Below, piece by piece: positions 5,249 through 43,769 of a DNA stretch of 64,000 nucleotides. Position 1 is the first letter of the stretch. Each line of letters starts with the position of its first letter. The notes under the pieces are model-generated. The model saw only the letters and a list, made by a program, of their open reading frames with translations, made no database searches and was not told where the DNA came from. The DNA comes from Heteronotia binoei (taxonomy: Eukaryota), in the NCBI RefSeq assembly GCF_032191835.1, contig NC_083223.1, positions 229,524,001 through 229,588,000 on the forward strand, read 5' to 3'. The position numbers and the translations under genes are program-made.

Positions 5249-6484
5249 TAATGGATGGCAATTTCAGGCATATGGTTGAGGCAACAGATGTACATGTAAC
5301 TTGGCCTCCCTACCACAGCCTTTCTCTGTATGGGCCAGTTCTGAGAAGTTTGTGCTCAGCGGCACTGGTCTCTGACTTTGTGTTTCCTAGCTGATGGCTT
5401 TTTGTTTAAAATTTTATTTTAACTGTTTAATACACTTATGCAGGGTTGTTTTGCAGAAAAATAGGTAGTGAAGCTCATCAGCATAACTCATTAGCATATG
5501 CTGCCCTCCCCCACCAGCCAAAAGCAACCTGATATAAGAAAAGAGAGCCCCTGGCGAGTGAGCCCGGCTTGGGCTGGCTAGAGCCCCTCACTCCCCTGGG
5601 GCTCTCCTGGGCCCCACAGTCAAAAGGCCAGCAAGCCACCTGCCGCCCAAAATCACATAAGAAGTGGAGAAAGGGTGGTGTGGGCTTCTCCAGGGGTTAA
5701 TGAGGGCTGCTGGGGGTGTGGCAAAGCTCCTGTTGGCTGACTGGCTGCCCATTCTCCAAATCCAGGGACTGTTATGCAGCTGCACCTACTATTCAATGGA
5801 CAAGGTAGGTGAAGAGGAGAAGGGGGGTGTCAGAAAAGTTCAGGAGCTGTGCTCCTATGAGCTCCTGCAGAATCTGAGGCCTGTACTTATGTTTTAACTA
5901 ATTATGTTATTTTTATATATTGTAATCCACTCTGAGCCTGCTTGTGAGGAGGGCAGAATATAAAAAAATAAAGGTTGAGGGCCCACTGCCTCAAGATGAT
6001 CCATCACGACCCATTAGCAAGCAATCTGTGACAATATCACTGCTTGGCCATAGAGGCAGCCTCCACCATATATCTTTGGGTCAGCATTGCAGATAGGGCC
6101 ATTTCAGATCCTGCCCCCTTCCAGAAGTCATGCTCTGCCATTGCCGTAAGTGGTATGGCAGCAGCTCCTCCAGCGCTCCAGATGTCCTTCAGGGTTAGAA
6201 GGTAGCCAAAAGCATGAACTGCTATTGTTTGGCACTGTTAGAAGTGAACCTTTGCCCTCTCAAGCACTCCTATCTGTAGTGCCACGGTGCTCCTTTCCAT
6301 AGCAGCCATTTGCTCACTCGTCCTTCTGAACTGCCAAGTGGTAGTAGCAACTGGAGTAGCAACAGCATCAGACTTTCCTGCTCCTTCTTCAGGGTGGCAG
6401 AAATTCCAGACTTCTGCTTTCTCACTACAGAACAGCCGAGTGGGTCGTACTTTTGCTAGTGAGCTGTCCCATTGTTTTTATTTA

Positions 6485-7653: not shown

Positions 7654-10229
7654 CTGTGGAGCCAAGGAACACATTGAGTTTGAGTTGTTTTACCTTGCCA
7701 TATGGATTCCCAGTCTTTCCCTGAGAAGGACAGGATGGAACATGTGAAGGCTTACTTGCATTTCATCTTTATGGGAAAGGCTTGAAGATAACAACGTGTA
7801 AAAAGGAATCTAGTGGTCATTGTGACTGAGTTAGTAGAACAGCATAAAAGGAGTACTTCTGGTCACACTAATAGTTCATCTAGCTCAGCATCCTGTTTCC
7901 CACAGTGGCCAACAAGTTTCCTGGATGGCATTGCACAGTTGTCGCACTTAAGTACTTATAGTAGTATTTCTTTTGAGCATGGAGATTCCACGCAGACGTC
8001 ATGACTCTGTCTACTCCTGTTTTAAAGTTGTCTTAAACTAGTGGACATCACTATATCCCATGGTAGTGAGCTCCACAAGCAAATTATGCATTGTGTGAAG
8101 AATTACACATGGATACATGAAATGACTTTATACTGAGTTGCTCTTTTGTCTACTCTGAGTGACAGCAGCTCTTCAAGGTCTCAGGCAGAAGTAACATCAC
8201 CTGTTACTTGATCCTTTTAACTGGAGATGACAGGAGTTGGACCAATGGACTTTTTTTCCTATCCGAAATCCAAGGAAAATGACCAGCCGCACAGAAGTTT
8301 CTGTCTCTGGATTACACTTTCACTGCTGGGCATTTAAACCCAGATCTCCCTACTTTGTCAACACTGCCTCTTCAGATTATCTTCTTCTGAGGAAGCTATA
8401 AAGTGATGCTGTAGGTGTAATCACAGAATCTCCCCTATAATATAATTATCCAGACAGACTGGCCATGGGTTCACCTAATCTCCCATTGTTGCTCAATCTC
8501 AATGGAGAGCAACCCCCCACCCTCCAGCCCCAGGACAGACAAGGGTTGAGCCATTGTTTCACAGAGGAGAGAAAGAAACCCTTCCCTCAGTTGGCTGAGG
8601 GCTCCGCCATCTCCTCATCTGGAAGGAAAACAGCTAGAGACAGAGGGAAAAAATGGTGTCTTGTGGCAGCAGACCAGATTCAGGAAGGGAGGGAGGAAGG
8701 GAAAGAGAGAAGACCAACAATGTTACCAGAGAGACAGTGTTGTCTGAACATATCACTGAAGGCCTCTGAGGAAGAACTCATTGGGGCCAGTTGTGACTAG
8801 GGCTGCCAGTTCCAGGTTGGTGGGAAATTCCTGGAGATTTTGTGATGGAGCTTGAGGAGGGCATAGGAGTTAGGGCTTTAGAACAGGGTCTGCCAGACCA
8901 AGGTTCTTGCTGTGGAAGCTGACTGGGTGATTTTGGACCAGTCACATACTTTCAGCCTAACCTACCTCACAGGGTTGTGCAGACCAAAGTGGGTGGGGGA
9001 AGAGGAGAATGATGTAAGCTGCTTTGGTTCCCCCTCACTGTGAAGAAAGACTGCCCTTTTCCTAGGTAGAGGTTACAGGGAGAGGAGAGGTGATGGAAAG
9101 CTGAAGTCAAAAGGGCAGTTAAAGAGAAGGAGATAGAGTTGCCAACTCCGGGTTAAGAAATTCCTGGAGATTTAAGGGATGGAACCTGGAGGAGGTGAGG
9201 CTTGAGGAGAGGTGGGACCTCAGGCAGGTACAATGCCATACACTCCACCCTTCAAACCAGCCATTTCCTCCTAGGGAACCATTGCTGCCAATCTCCAGGT
9301 GAGGGCTGGAGATCACTCAAAATTACAGCTGCTCTCCAGATAGCAGAGATCAGCTCCCCTTGAGGTGGGGAGAGTGAATGCCTTCACTTGGGTGGGAAGG
9401 CAGCAAGGGTGGGGGGGCACTCACCTAGAGCCTCTTTCTAGAGCCCGTTATATTTTTTTCTTCACAACAGCCCTCATTTCGAGTTTAGAATAAAAATACA
9501 ATCCCTGCTTTAAAGAGCTAAAACAACAAGTATACCAAGACAACCAGCATTCTAGAAGAGGAAAAGACAGACCCTTTATGATTAGACTAGCAATACAATC
9601 CTAAGAACACTTTCCTGGGAATAAGCATCATTGGATAGAATGGGGTAGGACTATAAATATTGCAATTATAACCAGGTATGCCAAGATGTCACCAGGAACA
9701 GTAACTGTTTGGTACAGAGATCTTTGTTTGCTGATACATGTAATGATCTTTGAATCCAAGTTGTGAAGCATTAAGTCTCAGAGTTCTCTATGTTAACTGC
9801 TTACTATTAATAAATGTAGTGTGTGTGCATGTTTGTGTTTGTTTTGATGCCTTCTCTGATGTGCATAAACTCCATATGACAAGTATAGATATGGAGAATG
9901 GAGCAGGATCATTACAAAAAGGTTATATTTTCTGAGCAGAGTTGCTTTACATTAGGACCCCATTATATTGTTTGAAAGAATACATCACACATACAGGCAA
10001 ATTCATTTCATTCTGAATGAATTTAGCATGCTGAACTCTAAATCATTTTTATGATACTTGTCTAACATATGAATACATGATTGGTTAAGCCAACTAGTAT
10101 TTAGTCACTGGAGATCAATATGAAAAACTGACTCAGATAAAAGCTACCTTTGAATCCCTTCTCACCACTGTTTAAGTAATCTATTCCCAAACAACAAGGT
10201 GATGGTTACGGCAAGAGACAATGACTGAG

Positions 10230-10708
10230 TGTCAGCGTAGGGGCATTGGAGTTCCAAGAATGAATAGACTTATTTTAGTTTAAAAATAAGTTTCCATTTA
10301 TTGATTACAACAATGTTGCACAGCGCAGAGTCATTGATACTAATGACGAAAGGGGTTCAAGCATAAGCATTTATGGATACACATCAAAGCAAGGAGCCTT
10401 AAGTTGCTTCCCATAATAAAACCTGGGCTGTCTCGTTGACAGAGAGCATTTCTCTTATCTGTTATCTCCCCGGCATGGCCTGTCTCTCCTCCTCGCTGTG
10501 GCCTTGCTAGGCCGGCCTGAGAACGAGTTAGATGTTTAACACTTCAAAGCTCTCTGGGAAGCTCTCTGGCACCTGGACTGTCTCTCCCAGCTATCCTTCA
10601 CATTTCGTTACAGTTTCAGGGTTAGTGAGGCGAGGTGCGAGGGTGTTAGTTAGCATTCAGATAAACATTTAGGGCAATAAAGACAAGCTTCAATGCACAT
10701 AGCTGACA
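10230..10708 (-). repeat. Gypsy 3' LTR
   Basis: TGTCAGC...GCTGACA termini. 6 substitutions versus 15621-16099 by manual comparison (about 1.3%). Minus-strand AATAAA at 10302-10297. Confidence 0.97.
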
Positions 10709-10724
10709 TACTGCCCCCCCCCTA
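10709..10724 (-). other. Polypurine tract of the Gypsy element
   Basis: Minus strand TAGGGGGGGGGCAGTA directly precedes the 3' LTR and overlaps the pol stop codon. Confidence 0.85.
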
Positions 10725-13700
10725 AGCTCTTGCTCGGGGTTTGTCTGGGTGCAGTAGGTAAAATTGCTTTAACAGTTGAGGAGCGTTTAGGTCGGAGGAT
10801 TTCACCCACTCATCACAACTAGGCGGGAAGTGGCGCCAGCGGATCAAATACTGTAGGACACCCCGCTGCAGCCTAGAATCTAAGATCTCCTTCACCTCGT
10901 GATGTTTCTGGCCCCTCACTAGAATAGGTTCCGGTTCGGGGCTCCGGAGATGCCACTTCGACCCACCCGGATCGCGACGGATCAGACTGCAATGGAAAAC
11001 AGGGTGTATTTTACTGAACAGTTTGGGCAGGTCTAGTTCGACTGTCACCTTGTTAATCACCTTCTTTATTCAGAATGATCCCAAGAAATGATACGCTAGT
11101 TTCCTGGAGGTCTGAGGTAGCGGGAGGTTCTTGGTGGACAAGAATACAGTCTCCCCCACCTTGAAATCCCACCCTGGGCTATGTTTTTTTGTCAAACTAA
11201 GCCTTGTAATCCCTTTTTGCTTCCTCCAGGTTGTCTTGTATCATTTCCCAGGATTTCTCCAGGTTCCCCCACCATTGTTGGCATTCGGGAGATAATGGCG
11301 TGTCCGTCCCCTCTGGGAGGGAAGGGAACGGTTTGCCCTCATAGCCATTTACTGCTTGGAAGGGGGAGACCTTGATGGAGCTATGCAAGCTGTTGTTGTA
11401 GCTGTATTCTGCAAAGGGCAATAAGTCCACCCAATTTGACTGTTGAAAGTTTATATAGCAGCGTAAATACTGCTCCAGAAGTCCATTAACCCTCTCACTC
11501 TGGCCGTCCATTTGCGGGTGGTAAGCTGAGCTGAGCCCTTGTTCCATGCCCGTTAATTTGCAAAACTCCCGCCAGAAGTTGGCAACGAACTGTGGCCCGC
11601 GGTCACTAATGACCTTATCGGGGAACGAGTGAACCCGGACCACGTGGAGGAAGAACAACTGGGCCAGTTCTTTTGCAGTAGGGAGTTTGCGGCAAGGAAT
11701 GAAATGCGCTTGCTTCGAGAAGGTATCTACCACTACTAGTATTACCGTTCGGCCACGAGATGGTGGTAGCTCTACTATAAAGTACATTGACACTACCGAT
11801 CACGGCCGTTCTGCGGAGGAGAGGGGCTGCAATAACTCCGACACTTTGCCCCCCCCTCCGTTTTGCCATTAAGCAAGTCGGGCAAGTCTGGATAAATTCT
11901 GAAATGTCTCTTTTCATATGGGGCCACCAGAACTGCCGGTGGACTAGGTGGAGGGTCTTCACGTACCCAAAATGCCCTGCTAGTTTGTTGGTGTGGCAGT
12001 GTTGTAGGACTTCTACCCACAGGGATTTCGGGACGTAAAGTTTTCCTTCGTGGTACCAGAACCCCCCTTCCCCCTTCTCTATTCCCGCGGGGCGGCTTTC
12101 CCCCTCGGCCTCCGCCTCGGCTTTGAGCTTGTTCCCCCCACACGGAATTGTGTCTTGGTTGGTCCTTTTTGATCTGGTTTGTACTGCCCCCGCTACGGCT
12201 TCGGAGGGAATTAGTGAGTCTATGACCTCTTCGCGCTTGCTTTTGTGTTGGGGAAGCCGCGAGAGGGCGTCGGCTAAGAAATTTTTCAATCCCGGGATAT
12301 GCCGTAGTGTAAAGTCGAATTTGGCAAAAAAACCCCGCCCAGCGGATCTGCTTCCCCGTCAGTTTTCGGCGCCCCGTGAGAGCCTCTAAGTTTTTGTGGT
12401 CTGTCCAGATCTCAAAGGGGACCCGGGCGCCTTCTAGCCACGATCGCCATGTTTTTAAGGCAAATGTGACTGCATAGGCCTCCTTGTCCACACTGACCAA
12501 TTCCGCTGTTCGTTTGAGAATTTGCGGGAGATGTAGGCGCACGGTCGCAAGCGCCCTTCCCTATCTTTCTGCATTAATATCACTCCCATGGCCGTGTCGG
12601 AAGCGTCACACTGGACCACGAAGGGTTCGAGCTCGTTCGGGTGCACTAGCACCGGCTCGCTGGTGAACAGGCGTTTGAGGGTGTCGAACGCCTGTTGGCA
12701 TTGACTGGTACAGTTTAGCTTGGCCCTGGGTTTTTTTTGCTTCAGGCCCCTTTCCTTTGGTCTACAGGAGGTCGGTCAGGGGGAGGGCAACCTTAGCGAA
12801 CCCCTGAATGAACCCCCTGTAAAAATTTGCGAAGCTGAGGAACGATTGGAGCTGTCTACGTGTCCTCGGGGGTTCCCACTCTAGCACGGCTTGTATCTTT
12901 GCCGGGTCCATGGCTAATCCCTGACCGGATACCCTGAACCCCAGGTAGTCTAATTCCTTTTGGTGGAACTCGCATTTCGACAGTTTGGCATACAGTTTGT
13001 TTTTATACAGAGTTTCTAAAACTTCTCGAACCAACTTCACGTGTGAGGGGAGGTCTTTTGAATAAATAATGATGTCATCCAGGTACACCACCACCCCCTG
13101 GCACAAAAACTTTCTCAGCACGTCATTGATAAAGTTCATGAACACTCCCGGGGCCCCCTGAAGTCCGAACGGCATTACTAAGTACTCAAACTGTCCCATC
13201 GGGGTGTTGAACGCAGTTTTCCACTAGTCCCCCTCCTTAATCCTTACTCTGAAGTACGCGTCTCGGAGATCTAGTTTGGTGAAAATGGATCCCTTCGAGA
13301 CCTCACTCAGGAGGTCCTTGATAAGGGGGAGGGGGTATGCATTGGACATGGAAAGCCCATTAATCCCGCGAAAATCAGTACAAAGTCTCAGACTCCCATC
13401 CTTTTTCTTTCGGAACAGAACCGGCACCGCATGGGGGGCCGTGGCCGGCCGGATGAAACCCCGCCAGAGGTTTTTGTCTAGGAATCTACGCAGCTTCTCT
13501 TTTTCGGCCCACCCCATGGAGTAGAGTTTGGCTTTGGGCAGTGCCTGGCCTGGGATCAGTTCTATGGCACAGTCCGTGCTCCTGTGCGGCGGTTATTCGT
13601 CCACCTTGATCTCGCTGAAAGCTCCCTTCAGGTCTCGGTATTCCCGTGGGATAGACTTTACCTCCTCTATGGTTACACATAGTCTCTCGTTCTTGGGGGG

Positions 13701-14198
13701 CGGTTTGGGGCCCCACGCCTCTCTCCACAGGTGCGAGGTGCACCGTCGGTCAATAAAGTCTATCGTGTGTTCCGCCCAATCTATCTTTGGCTGGTGCCGA
13801 GCTAGCCACCCCACTCCTAACACTATATCGAAGGAGCACGACGGGGCAATAACAAATGTTTTCAGGTCCCAATGGTCGATTATGCCCATCGGGATCTCCT
13901 GTGTCTGCTCCGTACAGGGTTTCCCCCTCATTCTAGTCCCGTCCATCTGTTCAAACTCTAGGGGCCGTGGTAGGAGCTCTGTTGTGAGCTCCAGCATTTC
14001 TACAAATCAGGGGGTTATAATCTCTCTGGTGCATCCCGAGTCGATGAGGGCTCGAGCGTGCACGAATCTCTTCAGTTTTACATTTAGCAAAGTCAAGGGG
14101 ACAAACATAAGTTCTCCAGAAATTCTCACCCGTAGTGGTGCCGCTTTCTCCGGTACCTGCCGCTGGGCACCCTCTAGTGCAGGTCGGTCCCGTTTCCC
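10722..14198 (-). pseudogene. Gypsy pol (protease, RT, RNase H, integrase, chromodomain), disrupted
   Basis: LIDSGCT (Asp codon at 14042). RT LRLCTDFRGIN...KLDLRDAY and VVVYLDDIII. RNase H QCDASD and TDHKNL. Integrase HHCC, VVDTFSK...SDRGPQF...GQSERVN, HPVFHCSL. Chromodomain HEVKEILDSR...QYLIRW...EWV. Several frameshifts and stops. Confidence 0.95.
14137..14198 (-). promoter_or_regulatory. -1 programmed ribosomal frameshift signal (G GGA AAC plus H-type pseudoknot) at the gag/pol overlap
   Basis: The heptamer at 14198-14192 is in the zinc-knuckle frame. The -1 frame is open for 52 codons to the protease Asp. Stems: ACCTGC/GCAGGT and GGTGCC/GGCACC. Confidence 0.8.
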
Positions 14199-15566
14199 GC
14201 CGGCTCCGGCTCCCAGGGATAAGCGGTGCTGCTGCGGCTGGATTCCTTCGGTTTCTTGAGTCCCCCCGTGGGACCCTTAGCGGCTGGGGTGGTAGGTCGG
14301 GCGCGCTCAGGGCAGTTGGCAGCTAAGTGGTTCGGGTCCCCACACTGGTAGCACTTGCGGGGCCTAGGGAAGGGTTTGGTGGTCCCCCCCCCCTGGGTGT
14401 CTTCTTAGCCTTTACCTTTGGGGTTGATCGGCTCTCTTGGCTGGGCTTGCCCTGGTGCCCCTGGCGTTGGATGGCCACCTCCTTCATGTTCGTTTTGACT
14501 TCCCCGGCTAGTTGGATCCACCCAACGAGGTCGGCCAGCCTCGCCTGCTGGAGGACCCAATCCAGGATCCCGGCGTTCAGCCCTTTCTTGAATGCCCTAA
14601 TCTTCATGGCCTCGCTCCAGCCTCGGATTTTTCGGCAGTGGTTGTGAAACTCCAGAGCGTACTCCCGGATCGACCTGCTCCCCTGCCGGATTTCGTCTAT
14701 CGCGGCGATGGCTCGGATCTCCCGCAGCGGGTCCTCAAATTGGGATAGGAGGGCCTGCAGGAAACCCGCAACCATGGCCACGGCTGGCCCACGGATCTCA
14801 TGGAGGCTCACGTACCACAGTTGGGCATCCCCCATCATCCTCAACCCCATGTAGGCCACTCGGCTGTGCTTGTCTGGGAAAGTGTTCCCCCAGTAGTGCA
14901 TGTAGCTGGTGGCTTGGAGGACGAAGTACTCCACTTTGTCAGGGGTGCCATCGAAGGTGATATCCAGCTCCTGGGTCTTCACTTTTGGGGCGGCTGGCCC
15001 AGCCGGGGCCGCGGCTGCCCCCGTGCCCCCCGGCTGCACCGGTTGCACGAGGATGGACAGTGGCAGCACAACAGTTGCTCCCGGGGCTCATGGCAGGGCC
15101 CGTTCGATTTGCTTCTGCACCTCTCGCAGCATCAGAGTAAAGTTTGCCTTCATTTCTTGCCTCAGGTCGCACCCCAGGATTTCCATCTCTCTCCGCAGGT
15201 CCTCGGTGGGGTCGCGCTTCGGGGAGGAGGCCCTCGAATCGCACCCATCCTCGCCCTCCGAATCGGGTTGGCGGTCCCCCAACAGCGTATGCTCTCGGGC
15301 TCCCCCCTCTCCAACCATGCCGCTCCGCCAATCCGGGCTCCCGCGGTCCTCCGTCTCTCCGGGGGTGTGGAGGAGGTTGGCGTGCCTCGCCGCTGCCTCG
15401 TCCATCAGGGTAGTAGAAGTCTGAGATTCCAGGAGGCCTTTGGGGTGATGAACAGCGCGTGGCTGCTCACTTTCTTCGCCTTCCGCTCTGTGATGTAGCA
15501 CGGCGGGGTCTCCGGCTTCTGGTTGAGTGTAAAAGGCTCTCGGTCGTCGAGGACTTCTTCAGCCAT
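14174..15566 (-). pseudogene. Gypsy gag (capsid plus CCHC zinc knuckle), disrupted
   Basis: Likely ATG at 15566. Capsid motif TFDGTPDKVEYF...AQLWY and zinc knuckle CYQCGDPNHLAANC from 14353. In-frame TGA at 15090-15088, frameshift at the G10 run 14393-14384, natural stop TAG at 14176-14174. Confidence 0.9.
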
Positions 15567-15607
15567 TCGCTAATAAGTAACTCACGTCCGATAAGCCCCT
15601 TGTGAGG

Positions 15608-15618
15608 ATTAGTATCAA
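15608..15618 (-). promoter_or_regulatory. Primer-binding site of the Gypsy element, self-priming (non-tRNA) type
   Basis: Minus TTGATACTAAT begins 2 nt after the 5' LTR. It is the exact reverse complement of minus ATTAGTATCAA inside the LTR (15735-15725) and lacks the TGG start of a tRNA 3'-end PBS. Confidence 0.8.
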
Positions 15619-15620
15619 AA

Positions 15621-16099
15621 TGTCAGCTTAGGGGCATTGGAGTTCCAAGAATGAATAGACTTATTTTAGTTTAAAAATAAGTTTCCATTTATTGATTACA
15701 ACAATGTTGCACAGCGCAGAGTCATTGATACTAATGATGAAAGGGGTTCAAGCATAAGCATTTATGGATACACATCAAAGCAAGGAGCCTTAAGTTGCTT
15801 CCCATAATAAAACCTGGGCTGTCTCGTTGACAGAGAGCATTTCTCTTATCTGTTATCTCCCCGGCATGGCCTGTCTCTCCTCCCCACTGTGGCCTTGCTA
15901 GGCCGGTCTGAGAACGAGTTAGATGTTTAACACTTCAAAGCTCTCTGGGAAGCTCTCTGGCACCTGGACTGTCTCTCCCAGCTATCCTTCACATTTCGTT
16001 ACAGTTTCAGGGTTAGTGAGGCGAGGTGCGAGGGTGTTAGTTAGCATTCAGATAAACATTTAGGGTAATAAAGACAAGCTTCAATGCACATAGCTGACA
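15621..16099 (-). repeat. Gypsy 5' LTR
   Basis: 8-bp terminal inverted repeat TGTCAGCT/AGCTGACA. On the minus strand, CATAAAT (TATA-like) near 15765-15759 and AATAAA at 15693-15688. Confidence 0.97.
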
Positions 16100-16727
16100 C
16101 TGAGTCTTATTGCCTATTAATTTCAAAAAAGAGATGCATCGTAGGTTGATATATAATAGCACAATGCTGTATTTTACTCCATATACTTGAATTGGCTCTA
16201 TCAAGGCTTTTTTTGTAGCAGGAACTCCTTTGCATATTAGGCCACACACCCTTGATGCAGCCAATCCTCCAAGAATTTACAGGCCTCTTAGTACAGGGCC
16301 TACTGTAAGCTCCAAAAGGATTGGCTACATTAGGGGTGTTTTGACGTAAGTTTTATAGCGGGGCAGACATTGTAGCTCCAAAGCAGTGTGCACACACGCC
16401 AGCAGAGGTTGGTACTATTTACAATTTTATTTACAATATATATATACATAGTCCTTATAGTCAGTCAGAGTTCTTACTGACAAACTGCTTTACCAGACAC
16501 CTGATACCACAATGGCATAGACTGGCAAGTACAGCACAGACTTATATACAGAGTTATGTGTCCTTTTACCCAATCAGTGCAGACATGCTGAGTCACTGAA
16601 GTACCACCTGCAGGCTGATGCAATATGTCCAGTCATGTGATCTTTACCTGTCAGATTGATCAACATGATCTGTCTGCAAGTTGCTATCTTGTTAAGGCAT
16701 TTCTACTTCACATTTCTACTTCTACTT

Positions 16728-19325
16728 CTACTTTATGCCCAGGATAAAACTTGTTATACACAACTTACTTTGGAGATATTCGAACTTTTCCACAGTTAAG
16801 CATTTTGTATATATATGTCAGCTACATTATGTTCTGATGCACAGTGCTGCAAAGAAACAAATCCTCGAGACACAGCAGTCCATACATTCTGGTAGCGAAT
16901 ATTGATGTGTTTACTCCTTATATGGATTCCCTGATTGTTTGCCAATTGTTGAGCTGCTAAACTGTCGCAATGTATAATTACAGGCAATTTACAGTTTACA
17001 TGCATATCTATAAGCAACTGATAACACCACTCTAATTGTACCAGGCAATCACTAAAAGCTGAATACTCTGCTTCACATGAGCTAGTAGACACACGTGTTT
17101 GTTTAATTGACTTCCATAACACTAAGGCTTCAAACATGTAGATGGCATAACCAGACGTTGATTTACCATCTACTCTTTCTCCCCAGCTGGCATCACAATA
17201 GGCTAATAGTGCTTGTTCCTTATCTGAACTCAGGACTAGCTTATTGCTAACAGTTCCTTTTAGATATCGAAGGATTCTTTTTGCTGCTACCCAATCTTTT
17301 CTGTATGGACAGGCACTCTTTTGACACAACCAATGAACAGCAATACATATGTCGGGACGTGTCCAGCATGCTATGTACAGCAATGAACCTACTAATGATT
17401 GATATACTGCCTTGTGGGGAAATACCTCATCATGTTTCCCTACAATAACCAGTAGTCATTGGTGTACATGCACTGTGTGCTTCTGACATTCCATACTTGT
17501 CCAGAAACAGCTTCAGCCCAAAATGATATAGGAAGATTTGCATCTGTCAACATTGAATGCATCATCGTTTGTAGGAACCCTTCCTTTTGTTCTGCTACAC
17601 CATTCTCTTGGGGAGAGGCTACATTGGCAACCCTGTGCTCTATCCCTTGGGAGTTTAGCCAGTGCGTTAATTCCCCTGACATATATTCTCCACCCATATC
17701 TGACTGGAACGCACAGATCTCATGTCCTAATTGCTTTTGTACATTCCTTGCCCACAGTTTCACTGTAGCACATACCTCAGATTTTCTCTGAAGAGGAAAC
17801 ACCCATGTAAACCGAGAAAAATCATCCACCAACACCAACGCAAAATGTCGATTAGAATGACTGTGAGGATATGGCCCCACAACATCAGAGTGTACTAGAG
17901 CTAAGGGCTTTTCTGTTACCCTTACACTCTGTTTTGGTACTGAGTGTGCTTTGGATTTGGATTGCTTACAAACATCACAATCCAAGAATGTTTTACACTC
18001 CTGTACTACCTCTTTGCCAATTAATGCCAGAGTTTTGTTAATGGTGCTAAAACTAGCATGACCTAGATGTCTATGCAACAAATGAATGCAATCGTCATGG
18101 GGACTCTTATTGGTAACATACTGTGCCTTACCAAACCCGTTATCCATTACATACACATTGTTCTTGAGCGTTCCTACAGCAAGGACTCTTTCACCTTTGA
18201 GAATGTTACAGCATTTGTTTTTAAACACAACACTGAAACCAGCCTTGCCCAAGGCACAGATACTCAACAGGTTGTTTTCAAGGGATGGGACACAGAGCAC
18301 ATTGTAAAATACATGGTCCAAAGCTGGAAAACATGTGCTGCCTTGACACACTACGGCAGCAGAGCGTCCATCAGCCAGACTCACGTGTTCCAATGTAGAA
18401 GGATGAATATCCTGCAGAAGATTCTTGTCCTGGGCAAAATCCTGAGATGCACCCGAGTCAATAATCCAAACCTCCAGAGACAGTATATTTGCCATAACTA
18501 ACGTGGCTTGTAGCTTCTGCACAAAACAAGGCTTCCTTTCACCCCCATGTTTCAGTGTAGCCGTACATTCCCTTTTGAGATGATTTGTAGCTCCACAAAT
18601 AAAACAGCACCGCACTCTCAAAGCAACAGGCTCCTGAAGTTTCTTGCAGCTATCCATGTTGTCTTTGGCACGAAAACAGCTGTCGGCTCCTCTCCTCCTT
18701 TCTGGCTTGGCACGGTTCCTGGTCTTGTCAGCAACTACATCTCTCTGAAGCTGACGAGATTCCTCGTCCAGAAGACGGCCAGAAACATAACTTAAAGTGA
18801 ATTTTGTAGGTTCCATCGATTCCAGCGCAGTGGTAAGTGGGTCAAAATGCTTAAGATAATACAAACTTGATCATCTTCAGGCATCTGCTTCCCTCTCTGC
18901 ACAAGAAGCTGGAAATTGGTAGCCAAGGAATTTAGATGAGACTGAACTGACTGGCCTGCCTGCATAACCATCCTATACAGCCGCCTTGTTAAAGATACGA
19001 GAGAGCCAGCTGTCTGCTGAACATACACAGCCTTGAGGATATCCCATGCCACCTTAGCTGTAACTTTGTGTGCAACATGCACAAGCTGATCGTCAGCAAC
19101 ACTAAGTATGATTGTTGCCAAAGCCTTTTGGTCCTTGACGGTATCTTCAGCTGTTAGGCCTTGTGGAGGAAACGCAACATACTCCCACAAAGCCTTCTGC
19201 TTTAGATAACGTTCCATTTGGAGTGACCAAACCGTATAGGTGTCTGAAGTCAGCTTCTCCACATGCAAAGCCGTTGCCGCTTGGGCCATGGTTATCTCAC
19301 CAACAGGCACGCTCTGGTCACTCAT
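16728..19325 (-). pseudogene. Copia gag-pol, frameshifted and deleted
   Basis: Gag KLTSDTYTVWSLQM...AKVAWDILKAVY; knuckle CFICGATNHLKREC; protease WIIDSGAS; integrase LHRHLGH...CDVC, LVHSDVVGP, VDDFSRF, SDMGGEY, ENGVAE; RT tail TRPDI; RNase H YCDASW, SSCEAEY, SKHINIRY. No YVDD motif. Confidence 0.93.
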
Positions 19326-19454
19326 GGCCTCCTCCTCTGACTCTTCACAGTCGATTGCAGCACTGGCGGAAGACAGGTCACTGTCTGTTTTCACTGGCAG
19401 CAAAACATCCACCTCCGGACCTCTAGTAGAACCTCCACAGCTCAGTGCAGAGTT

Positions 19455-19469
19455 CTGGGCCCATAATCC
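19455..19469 (-). promoter_or_regulatory. Copia primer-binding site complementary to the internal (anticodon) region of tRNA-iMet
   Basis: Minus GGATTATGGGCCCAG abuts the 5' LTR. The canonical copia PBS is GGTTATGGGCCCAG, so this is a 12-nt perfect match plus a 1-nt insertion. Confidence 0.85.
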
Positions 19470-20257
19470 TGACGGAAGTTTTATAGCAGGGTAGACATTG
19501 TAGCTCCAAAGCAATGTGCACACACAGCAGCATAGGTTGGTACTATTTACAATTTTATTTACAATGTATGTACATAGTCCTTATAGTCAGTCAGAGTTCT
19601 TACTGACAAACTGCTTTGCCAAACACCTGTTACCACAATGGCATACACTGGCAAGTATAGCACAGACTTATATACAGAGTTATGTGTTCTTTTGCCCAAT
19701 CAGTACAGACATGCTGAATCACTGAAGCACCACCTGCAGGCTGATGCAATTTGTCAGTCATGTGATCTTTACCTGTCAGATAGATCAACATGATCTGTCT
19801 ACAAGTTGCTATCTTGTTTAGGCATTTCTACTTCATATGCTGGCATGTTTAGCCTAATATGCAAAGGAGTACCTGCTACAAAAAAAGCCCCAGGCTCCAT
19901 TGATTTAGGGCAATCATGATTTTTCTTCTTCTTTAAGTGCAAAACACCTCTGAGTTCTAAGGATGGTATGCTCCCTTCTGCTTTCCTTCATGTGTGACAT
20001 GGATACTGAAGGTTTCTGGATTCCCCAAATCACAATTTATTGTGATGTCCAGATCAGATAGAACAACAAACTGTGGGCTGTTCTCTCATTTCCAAATGAG
20101 GATTCTGAATTAAGGATAAACCATGACTGGAACCTTAGGATTGTAGACAATTAGTTTTCAGCAGGAAGTGCTGGTGAATTGTCTCATTACCTTTTCACCA
20201 GCAGTCCCCTTTGTCCACTTTTCATATTCTTCCTGAGGTATCAAGATCTGTCAGGAC

Positions 20258-20609: not shown

Positions 20610-20853
20610 GTCTGGACCAATAGGCACATTGAGGACTGCAGTGAGGAGAGAGAAGGTTGCAAAATTGTTGCTTCCTCCCTCTTCTGTGCTCTGCTGACAG
20701 AAAAGGGTTGGTGGAGCACTTCTGACCCCTTCTCACTGCACACCTCAGCCTCTACAATTTGTCATCTACATGGCTCGTGCAACTACAATAACAATATTTC
20801 CAGTGATCATAAAGGACTGTTGTGGGGAGCAGAATGCAACACCCACCAGAAGA

Positions 20854-21245
20854 GGGGCTATGGTTCAGTGGAAGAACTTCTGCTTCTCATGCAAAAGGTC
20901 CCAGGTTCAAACCCTAGCATTTCTAGTTAATAGATCTAGGCAGTATGTGATGTGAAAAACACCTTCCAGAGACCCCAGAGAGATATTGCCAGTTTGTGTA
21001 GGCAGTACTGACCTTGATGGACTAATGGTGTAATTCAGTATAAGACAGATTTATGTGTCTTTTTCTTTTGCGAGCAGCTATGGCTCAGTGGTAGAACATG
21101 GAGAGGGCCCAAGGGTTAATTCCCAGTATCTCCAACTAAAAAGATCAGATGTTAGGTGATGTGATGGCCTGAGGTTCTAGAGAGTTGCTGTCAGTCTGAG
21201 AAGACAACACTGATCTTGATTGACCAAAGGCAGCTCCATATGTAC
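20854..21245 (+). mobile_element. Two adjacent decayed tRNA-headed SINEs (Squam2-like); another copy near 46645-46835
   Basis: Heads GGGGCTATGGTTCAGTGG...GGTTCAAACCC and GCTATGGCTCAGTGGTAGA; shared body ...ACTGACCTTGATGGAC. Confidence 0.7.
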
Positions 21246-43033: not shown

Positions 43034-43769
43034 TAGGCTTCCCAACCCTCCCGCCCTGGCGGGGGACCCCAGGATTTCCACCCTCTTCCCCCGCTTCCCC
43101 AAAAAATGGAAGAGGGGGGAGGGGGGAAACGGCGCCGAGCTGCCGGATCCTGGAGCCGGCGAGGCCGCTGCGCCGCTGCCGCCCCCTCCCCGCCCACCGC
43201 AGTTTCTCCTCCGAGATGGGCCCAGGCTGAGCCCATCTCAGAGGAGCAGCCAAGAGGCGGCAGCAGCGCAGGGGAGGGCGAGGCAGGCCAGGAGCATGGC
43301 GAGCCGCGAATCCGGGCCCTTCTAGAACCCGGACTTGCGGCTCGCCACGCTCCCGGCCCGCTTCCCCCCCCCTCCGCTTCCGTCCCAGAGACGGAGCGGG
43401 CGAGGCGCCTGCGGCACGGCAGCCTCTTCTCCGCTCACCGTGGCTGCTCCTCCGAGATGGGTTCAGCCTGAGCCCATCTCGGAGGAGCAGCCACGGCGAG
43501 CGGAGAAGAGGCCGCCGCGCCGCTGCCACCTCTACTCTGCTCGCCGTGGCTGCTCCTCCAAGATGGGCTCAGGCTGAGCCCATCTCAGAGGAGCAGCCAC
43601 GGCGAGCGGAGCAGAGACTGCAGCTGCGGGGCGGCTCGCCACGCTCCCCGGCGCCGTTTCCCCCCTCCCCCCTAGCTCCACCCCAGTGTCTCCTGGCTCC
43701 ACCCCCAAAGTCTCCTGGCTCCACCCCCAAAGTCCCCAGATATTTCTGGGGTTGGATTTGGCAACCCTA
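43034..43769. mobile_element. Young CpG-rich non-autonomous hAT element with three internal hairpins
   Basis: TIR TAGGCTTCCCAA/TTGGCAACCCTA; perfect 8-bp TSD CTCCCTCT (43026-43033, 43770-43777). Confidence 0.88.

What the first reader, a model, noticed from the sequence alone, without database searches (positions are those of the whole stretch)
15596..15766. tRNA-independent self-priming signature (11-nt LTR-PBS complementarity)
Seen: the PBS position holds TTGATACTAAT (15618-15608), exactly complementary to ATTAGTATCAA in the LTR (15735-15725). That segment sits about 25-30 nt downstream of a CATAAAT box and upstream of the AATAAA, where a transcript 5' end is expected. A second pairing is possible between CCCCTT (15746-15741) and AAGGGG (15601-15596). 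Established: fission-yeast Tf1 primes reverse transcription with the first 11 nt of its own mRNA, and this has been proposed for fish sushi elements. Inference: an amniote lineage recently hosted an active self-priming chromovirus. This predicts a start site at or near 15735.
Basis: partly seen in the sequence, partly recalled or inferred. Interest (0 to 1): 0.75.

Follow-up and report, generated by a model that had tools for sequence, protein, structure and literature searches.

The report
Self-priming site in a squamate chromovirus
A young but broken Gypsy-type jumping gene in this reptile genome has, where a tRNA primer site normally sits, an 11-base site that pairs with the predicted start of its own RNA; this tRNA-free priming is already regarded as typical of its group (Tf1/sushi), so the finding is real but ordinary.

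Summary
A 5,870-bp Ty3/gypsy chromovirus lies on the minus strand. Its LTRs are 16099-15621 and 10708-10230 (479 nt, 6 differences), with a CTCAG target duplication. The order is gag-PR-RT-RNase H-integrase-chromodomain.

Two bases after the 5' LTR, TTGATACTAAT (15618-15608) is exactly complementary to ATTAGTATCAA (15735-15725). That segment starts 30-31 nt after a CATAAAT box and lies before AATAAA. A match this long occurs in about 0.15% of shuffled LTRs. The duplex is exactly 11 bp, bounded by mismatches, and appears in both the lowest-energy and centroid RNA folds. No TGG (tRNA 3'-end) site follows the LTR.

Distant relatives from metagenomes show the same layout with different sequences. 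One pair differs by two compensatory changes; a control locus has a tRNA-iMet-type site.

The most likely reading is Tf1/sushi-type self-priming. The literature already treats this as common to that group, vertebrates included, and active chromoviruses are known in squamates. This scan has noted the same signature at least eight times elsewhere in this genome.

This copy is dead: it has several stops and frame changes.

The parts
15621..16099 (-). 5' LTR, 479 nt, TGTCAGC...GCTGACA ends
   Evidence: Alignment of the two LTRs; 6 differences in 479
10230..10708 (-). 3' LTR, 479 nt
16100..16104 (-). Target-site duplication CTCAG, 5' side
   Evidence: Flanks in the alignment
10225..10229 (-). Target-site duplication CTCAG, 3' side
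15760..15766 (-). TATA-like box CATAAAT; its first base is 31 nt upstream of 15735
   Evidence: Sequence read; role as promoter is inferred
15725..15735 (-). Proposed self-primer ATTAGTATCAA, predicted first 11 nt of the RNA (start of R); CA initiator dinucleotide at 15736/15735
   Evidence: start site not tested
10334..10344 (-). Same 11-mer in the 3' LTR
15688..15693 (-). AATAAA polyadenylation signal in the LTR
   Evidence: Sequence read
15659..15682 (-). Perfect 9-bp hairpin just after AATAAA, near the expected R/U5 border
   Evidence: I4; present in the folds
15608..15618 (-). Primer binding site TTGATACTAAT, 2 nt after the LTR end
   Evidence: paired with the RNA 5' end in the lowest-energy and centroid folds
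15741..15746 (-). CCCCTT, upstream arm of a possible second helix (in U3 if the RNA starts at 15735)
15596..15601 (-). AAGGGG, downstream arm of the possible second helix
10714..10723 (-). Polypurine tract AGGGGGGGGG, 5 nt before the 3' LTR
14323..15566 (-). gag region in three ORF pieces: one frame change and one in-frame stop at 15088-15090
   Evidence: Retrotrans_gag, Ty3_capsid
10722..13997 (-). pol in eight ORF pieces: protease, RT, RNase H, integrase zinc finger and core, SH3 and chromodomain. In-frame stops at 13593-13595 and 13224-13226; five frame changes

Best explanation
This is the primer site of a Tf1/sushi-type self-priming chromovirus. Shown: it is an integrated LTR retrotransposon of the chromodomain-bearing Ty3/gypsy kind. 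No tRNA 3'-end site follows its 5' LTR. An exact 11-bp complement links the PBS position to an LTR segment that starts 30-31 nt after a TATA-like box. Inferred: transcription starts at about 15735, so the 11-mer is the 5' end of the RNA. The RNA folds back over about 106 nt so that its first 11 bases pair with the PBS. The element's RNase H cuts after base 11, and the freed 3' end primes minus-strand DNA synthesis, as demonstrated for Tf1. Because plus-strand strong-stop synthesis copies the primer, the PBS would be rewritten from the primer at each cycle. That would keep the pairing perfect and exactly as long as the primer. This particular copy is a dead relic, inserted recently in evolutionary terms.
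For: LTRs, target duplication, polypurine tract and TG..CA ends. Domain order gag-PR-RT-RNase H-integrase-chromodomain. Exact 11-nt complement 2 nt after the LTR, p about 0.0013-0.0017, bounded by mismatches on both sides. No TGG in the 40 nt after the LTR. The 5'-end/PBS duplex is in the lowest-energy and centroid folds, z -3.3. It is the longest inverted repeat of the LTR plus leader. Relatives fetched with this element's integrase show the same layout with other sequences: L042 13 nt (p 0.0003), L026 10 nt, L080 and L048 10 nt each. In L080 and L048 the segment lies 72-73 nt before the LTR end and about 33 nt after a TATAAG box, and the two differ by two compensatory transitions. The method also picks out a tRNA-iMet-type PBS in L047 as a control. 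Literature: the first 11 bases of Tf1 RNA pair with the PBS and RNase H cuts between bases 11 and 12 (PMC7175516); self-priming is likely common to Tf1/sushi elements, vertebrates included (PMC6317226, PMC4600332).
Against: No transcript start, cleavage or cDNA data. No second copy of this family was available, so covariation within the family is untested here. The relatives that show covariation are distant (37-52% integrase identity) and lie in the other half of the tree. Five of eleven relatives with LTR pairs gave no significant complement. The species' tRNA set was not available, so priming by an internal tRNA piece is not excluded.
Confidence: 0.75

Rival explanations
1. Self-priming with a longer, two-part fold-back. 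The RNA starts at or before 15746, and both CCCCTT/AAGGGG (6 bp) and the 11-bp helix clamp the 5' region onto the PBS. The primer would then be made by an internal cut after 15725, as proposed for Tj1 of S. japonicus, rather than being the first 11 bases.
For: A 22-nt imperfect inverted repeat (I1). The fold from 15750 contains both helices, z -4.3, and no shuffle of 200 folds as well. The second helix has p about 0.01-0.02. Tj1 is drawn with an upstream complementary region and a proposed cleavage site (PMC4600332).
Against: The only TATA-like box would then lie just 14-20 nt before the start. If a primer of 22 nt or more were copied into the PBS, the 5-6 unpaired bases between the helices should have been made complementary, and they are not. 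No second helix is seen in L080 or L048 (read).
Confidence: 0.1
2. The complement is a chance match or serves another RNA function such as dimerisation, packaging or end-to-end contact. The true primer would be a host RNA, for example an internal piece of a tRNA.
For: Some LTR retrotransposons use half-tRNA primers (PMC6317226). The species' tRNA set was not screened. An event with p of 0.0015 does occur by chance among thousands of elements in a genome.
Against: There is no TGG after the LTR. The one tRNA-like gene in the window shares no more than 5 nt with the region. The match sits at the canonical PBS position, pairs with the canonical start position, has the same length as in Tf1, and recurs in relatives with compensatory changes. 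Unverified scan notes report the same signature in other Gypsy families of this genome.
Confidence: 0.08

Closest known systems
Tf1 (and Tf2) of Schizosaccharomyces pombe, the founding self-priming LTR retrotransposons
   Same: Ty3/gypsy element with a chromodomain integrase. No tRNA PBS. An 11-nt complement links the PBS to the (here predicted) first bases of the RNA. Weak match to the Tf2-1-type SH3 domain.
   Different: Vertebrate host and a distant sequence. The start site and the RNase H cut are demonstrated for Tf1 but only inferred here. This gag and pol lie in different reading frames in a broken copy, so the original frame layout was not worked out. No Tf1 reference sequence was compared here.
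Vertebrate Tf1/sushi group (V-clade: sushi-ichi of fish, Amn-ichi/-ni/-san), with self-priming proposed by Butler et al. 2001 as cited in PMC6317226
   Same: [quoted passage not shown] The clade is reported in amniotes and sauropsids (PMC2774666, PMC3670739).
   Different: A squamate family whose nearest available relatives are unnamed snake proteins at about 54% integrase identity. Placement relative to named V-clade references was not tested.
Tj1 of Schizosaccharomyces japonicus
   Same: Self-priming inferred from complementarity between an upstream LTR segment and the PBS (PMC4600332).
   Different: Fungal element shown to be active in a transposition assay. This copy is dead and nothing here was tested at the bench.

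Membership tests
Chromovirus (Ty3/gypsy with chromodomain integrase) | Order gag-protease-RT-RNase H-integrase | tested here: met
   Pfam matches along the minus strand in that order
Chromovirus (Ty3/gypsy with chromodomain integrase) | Chromodomain at the integrase C-terminus | tested here: met
   PF00385 E 4e-9; HP1/CBX5 chromodomains E 4e-8
Chromovirus (Ty3/gypsy with chromodomain integrase) | LTRs with TG..CA ends, target duplication, polypurine tract | tested here: met
Tf1/sushi self-priming group | No PBS complementary to a tRNA 3' end (no TGG after the 5' LTR) | tested here: met
   No TGG in the 40 nt after 15621. Internal tRNA pieces could not be screened, because the species' tRNA set was not available
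Tf1/sushi self-priming group | PBS complementary to about 10-11 nt of the LTR downstream of the promoter | tested here: met
   11 of 11, p about 0.0015; 30-31 nt after CATAAAT
Tf1/sushi self-priming group | The complementary segment is the actual 5' end of the RNA | not testable with these tools
Tf1/sushi self-priming group | RNase H cleavage after base 11 and self-primed minus-strand cDNA | not testable with these tools
   Needs a bench assay
Tf1/sushi self-priming group | Primer and PBS covary among copies and subfamilies | tested here: inconclusive
   No other copy in the window and related squamate loci could not be fetched. Covariation was seen only in distant relatives L080 and L048
Tf1/sushi self-priming group | Pol phylogeny places it among Tf1/sushi (V-clade) elements | tested here: inconclusive
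   It groups with snake proteins at 100/98 support. No named Tf1 or sushi reference was in the tree. The SH3_Tf2-1 match is below the Pfam cut-off

The most novel reading that the evidence does not exclude
The 22-nt two-part inverted repeat (6 bp, internal loop, 11 bp) is functional. One possibility is a longer fold-back with an internal cut that makes the primer. Another follows from CCCCUU plus the 11-mer lying together at the U3/R junction near the 3' end of the genomic RNA: the 3' end could pair with the PBS region and bring the two RNA ends together for the first strand transfer. Either would be a variation on Tf1-type priming that has not been described.
Probability: 0.08. Interest if true: 0.45.

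Novelty: new member of a known kind. Interest (0 to 1): 0.2.

Why it matters
It adds a squamate example to the Tf1/sushi self-priming group and gives a sharp prediction: RNA start at 15735 and an 11-nt primer. A reptile element that was active recently could serve as a vertebrate model for tRNA-independent priming. It could also help annotate LTR elements that PBS-by-tRNA pipelines miss. It does not change what is already believed about this group.

Tried and rejected
- The gag piece found no homologues at E <= 1e-5 and no solved-structure relatives.
- A viral-contig scan with the integrase piece found nothing.
- There is no other copy or solo LTR of this family in the window.
- A look-up of earlier scan findings by sequence was blank, which means nothing according to the operators.
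- L028, one of the nearest non-squamate relatives, shares only a 114-nt repeat between its ends and gave no usable LTR/PBS pair.
- Two primary papers (PMC1369541, PMC109269) are not held. Their content is cited only through PMC7175516 and PMC6317226.
- The bacterial-type promoter scan has no bearing on a eukaryotic LTR.
- The tRNA-primed reading is rejected for the tRNA 3' end because no TGG follows the LTR.

Full report
**The observation.**
- ATTAGTATCAA at 15735-15725
- its exact reverse complement TTGATACTAAT at 15618-15608
- CATAAAT at 15766-15760
- AATAAA at 15693-15688
- CCCCTT at 15746-15741
- AAGGGG at 15601-15596

**The element.**
- Direct repeats of 479 nt lie at 16099-15621 and 10708-10230. 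They differ at 6 positions, which is 1.25%.
- They begin TGTCAGC and end GCTGACA and are flanked by a 5-bp duplication, CTCAG.
- A polypurine tract, AGGGGGGGGG, lies at 10723-10714, just before the 3' LTR.
The 11-mer begins 2 nt after the last LTR base.
- The internal region gives Pfam matches in the order Retrotrans_gag/Ty3_capsid, RVP_2, RVT_1, RT_RNaseH, Integrase_H2C2, rve, SH3_Tf2-1 (weak) and Chromo. The chromodomain also matches HP1/CBX5 structures at E 4e-8.
- It is therefore a chromovirus of 5,870 bp.

**State of this copy.** It is broken.
- In-frame stops lie at 15088-15090, 13593-13595 and 13224-13226.
- The reading frame changes between successive domain pieces: N-terminal gag, RT to RNase H, within RNase H, RNase H to the integrase zinc finger, zinc finger to integrase core, and core to SH3/chromodomain.
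- With 1.25% LTR divergence, the insertion is a few million years old if squamate neutral rates are near 1-2e-9 per site per year. Both that rate and the date are my assumption.
- The amount of damage is not far from what such an age would give, so the copy may have been intact when it inserted. That is an inference.

**More than chance?**
- I shuffled the LTR and asked for a complement of 11 nt or more starting 0-8 or 0-10 nt after the LTR. This gave 0.17% and 0.13%.
- The duplex cannot be extended. C faces C on one side and T faces T on the other. It is exactly 11 bp, the length known for Tf1 (PMC7175516).
- It is the longest inverted repeat in the LTR plus leader.
- An RNA from 15735 to 15590 puts the 5' end on the PBS in both the lowest-energy and the centroid structure. 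The z-score is -3.3.
- The 11-mer starts with the A of a CA dinucleotide, 30-31 nt after the first base of CATAAAT. This is the usual TATA-to-start spacing (established knowledge, not tested here).
- AATAAA follows 42 nt later, then a perfect 9-bp hairpin (I4). R would be about 60-70 nt and minus-strand strong-stop DNA about 106 nt.

**tRNA alternative.** No TGG occurs in the 40 nt after the LTR, so a tRNA 3' end cannot be the primer. The only tRNA-like gene in the window shares no more than 5 nt with the region. The species' tRNA set was not available, so an internal tRNA piece is not formally excluded.

**Relatives.**
- The integrase core piece finds 720 proteins. The best are hypothetical proteins of Crotalus adamanteus and other snakes at about 54% identity. 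In a tree the element groups with them at 100/98 support. This fits a squamate genome, as the scan's own notes say.
- A metagenome scan with an integrase alignment gave 80 loci at 37-52% identity. Eleven have LTR pairs.
- Applying the same test to them gave:

| Locus | Result |
|---|---|
| L042 | 13-nt complement, p 0.0003 |
| L026 | 10-nt complement, p 0.013 (its decayed relative L059 keeps 7 nt) |
| L080 | 10-nt complement, p 0.005 |
| L048 | 10-nt complement, p 0.007 |
| L047 | TGGTATCAGAGC, a tRNA-iMet-type site (control) |
| L007, L045, L054, L062, L028 | nothing significant |

- In L080 and L048 the LTR segment lies 72-73 nt before the LTR end and about 33 nt after a TATAAG box.
- These two loci are related but differ at two adjacent positions on both sides: ATCAAGTTCT with AGAACTTGAT against ATTGAGTTCT with AGAACTCAAT. 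These are compensatory transitions.
- So the layout recurs, with different letters, among elements retrieved by this element's own integrase.
- These loci sit in the other half of the tree. They support the class, not this family.

**Mechanism.**
- Self-priming is described as likely common to Tf1/sushi elements of fungi and vertebrates (PMC6317226, citing Butler et al. 2001; PMC4600332).
- The window element fits this in every feature that sequence alone can show.
- One further inference follows from the general scheme of reverse transcription. Plus-strand strong-stop DNA copies the primer, so the PBS is rewritten from the primer each cycle. This predicts a perfect match that ends exactly at the primer's 5' end. 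That is what is seen, and it favours a start at 15735.

**The second pairing.**
- CCCCTT/AAGGGG is real and modestly unlikely by chance (p 0.01-0.02). An RNA starting at 15750 folds with both helices, z -4.3.
- However, CCCCTT lies upstream of the predicted start. A start at or before 15746 would be only 14-20 nt from the TATA-like box. The unpaired bases between the two helices argue against a primer longer than 11 nt.
- I leave it as unexplained. It could be chance, or a contact made by the U3/R junction at the 3' end of the RNA.

**Comparison and novelty.**
- Chromoviruses of the V-clade are reported in amniotes and sauropsids (PMC2774666). Full-length, presumably active chromoviruses are reported in squamates (PMC3670739).
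- AATAAA close to the LTR's 3' end is a noted trait of Sushi LTRs (PMC3601003).
- In a full-text search, none of the 12 top-ranked papers that were listed contained the term self-priming together with the reptile terms. This is no proof of absence.
- The scan itself has noted the same signature at least eight times on other DNA of this genome. Three follow-ups judged it real but ordinary. These are unverified AI notes, and I could not check them.
- My verdict is a new member of a known kind.

Noticed in passing
window 16342-19838 (minus strand): About 240 nt from the chromovirus lies a 3.5-kb truncated Ty1/copia element. Its direct repeats, 16342-16713 and 19470-19838, are 91-95% identical. 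Its ORFs match Retrotran_gag_2, Pol_BBD, gag_pre-integrs and rve, but no RT was found. It is older than the chromovirus.
   Followed up: partly
window 20852-20924 (+): ARAGORN calls a tRNA-Glu (CTC). Its sequence looks degenerate, so it could be a SINE head or a pseudogene. It has no complementarity to the PBS.
   Followed up: partly
window 10709-15620: The internal region of the element has 53-57% G+C, against about 40-45% for the surrounding DNA and the LTRs. Five of the six LTR differences are transitions, several at CpG-like sites.
   Followed up: no
L080:2407-2730 versus L080:7872-8195: In this metagenome contig the 5' LTR carries ATCAAGTTCT, which matches its PBS. The 3' LTR carries ATTGAGTTCT, the variant that pairs with the PBS of L048. 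The contig may be a chimera of two family variants, or the site may have been converted.
   Followed up: partly
L028:1149-1262 and 5947-6058: In this near relative, only a 114-nt stretch containing AATAAA and ending CCTAACA is repeated at both ends. The sequence upstream of the two copies is unrelated. This suggests a truncated or recombinant 5' LTR, or a misassembly.
   Followed up: partly
window 43161-43613: Tandem-like repeats of about 106 nt (three copies, 74-85% identical).
   Followed up: no
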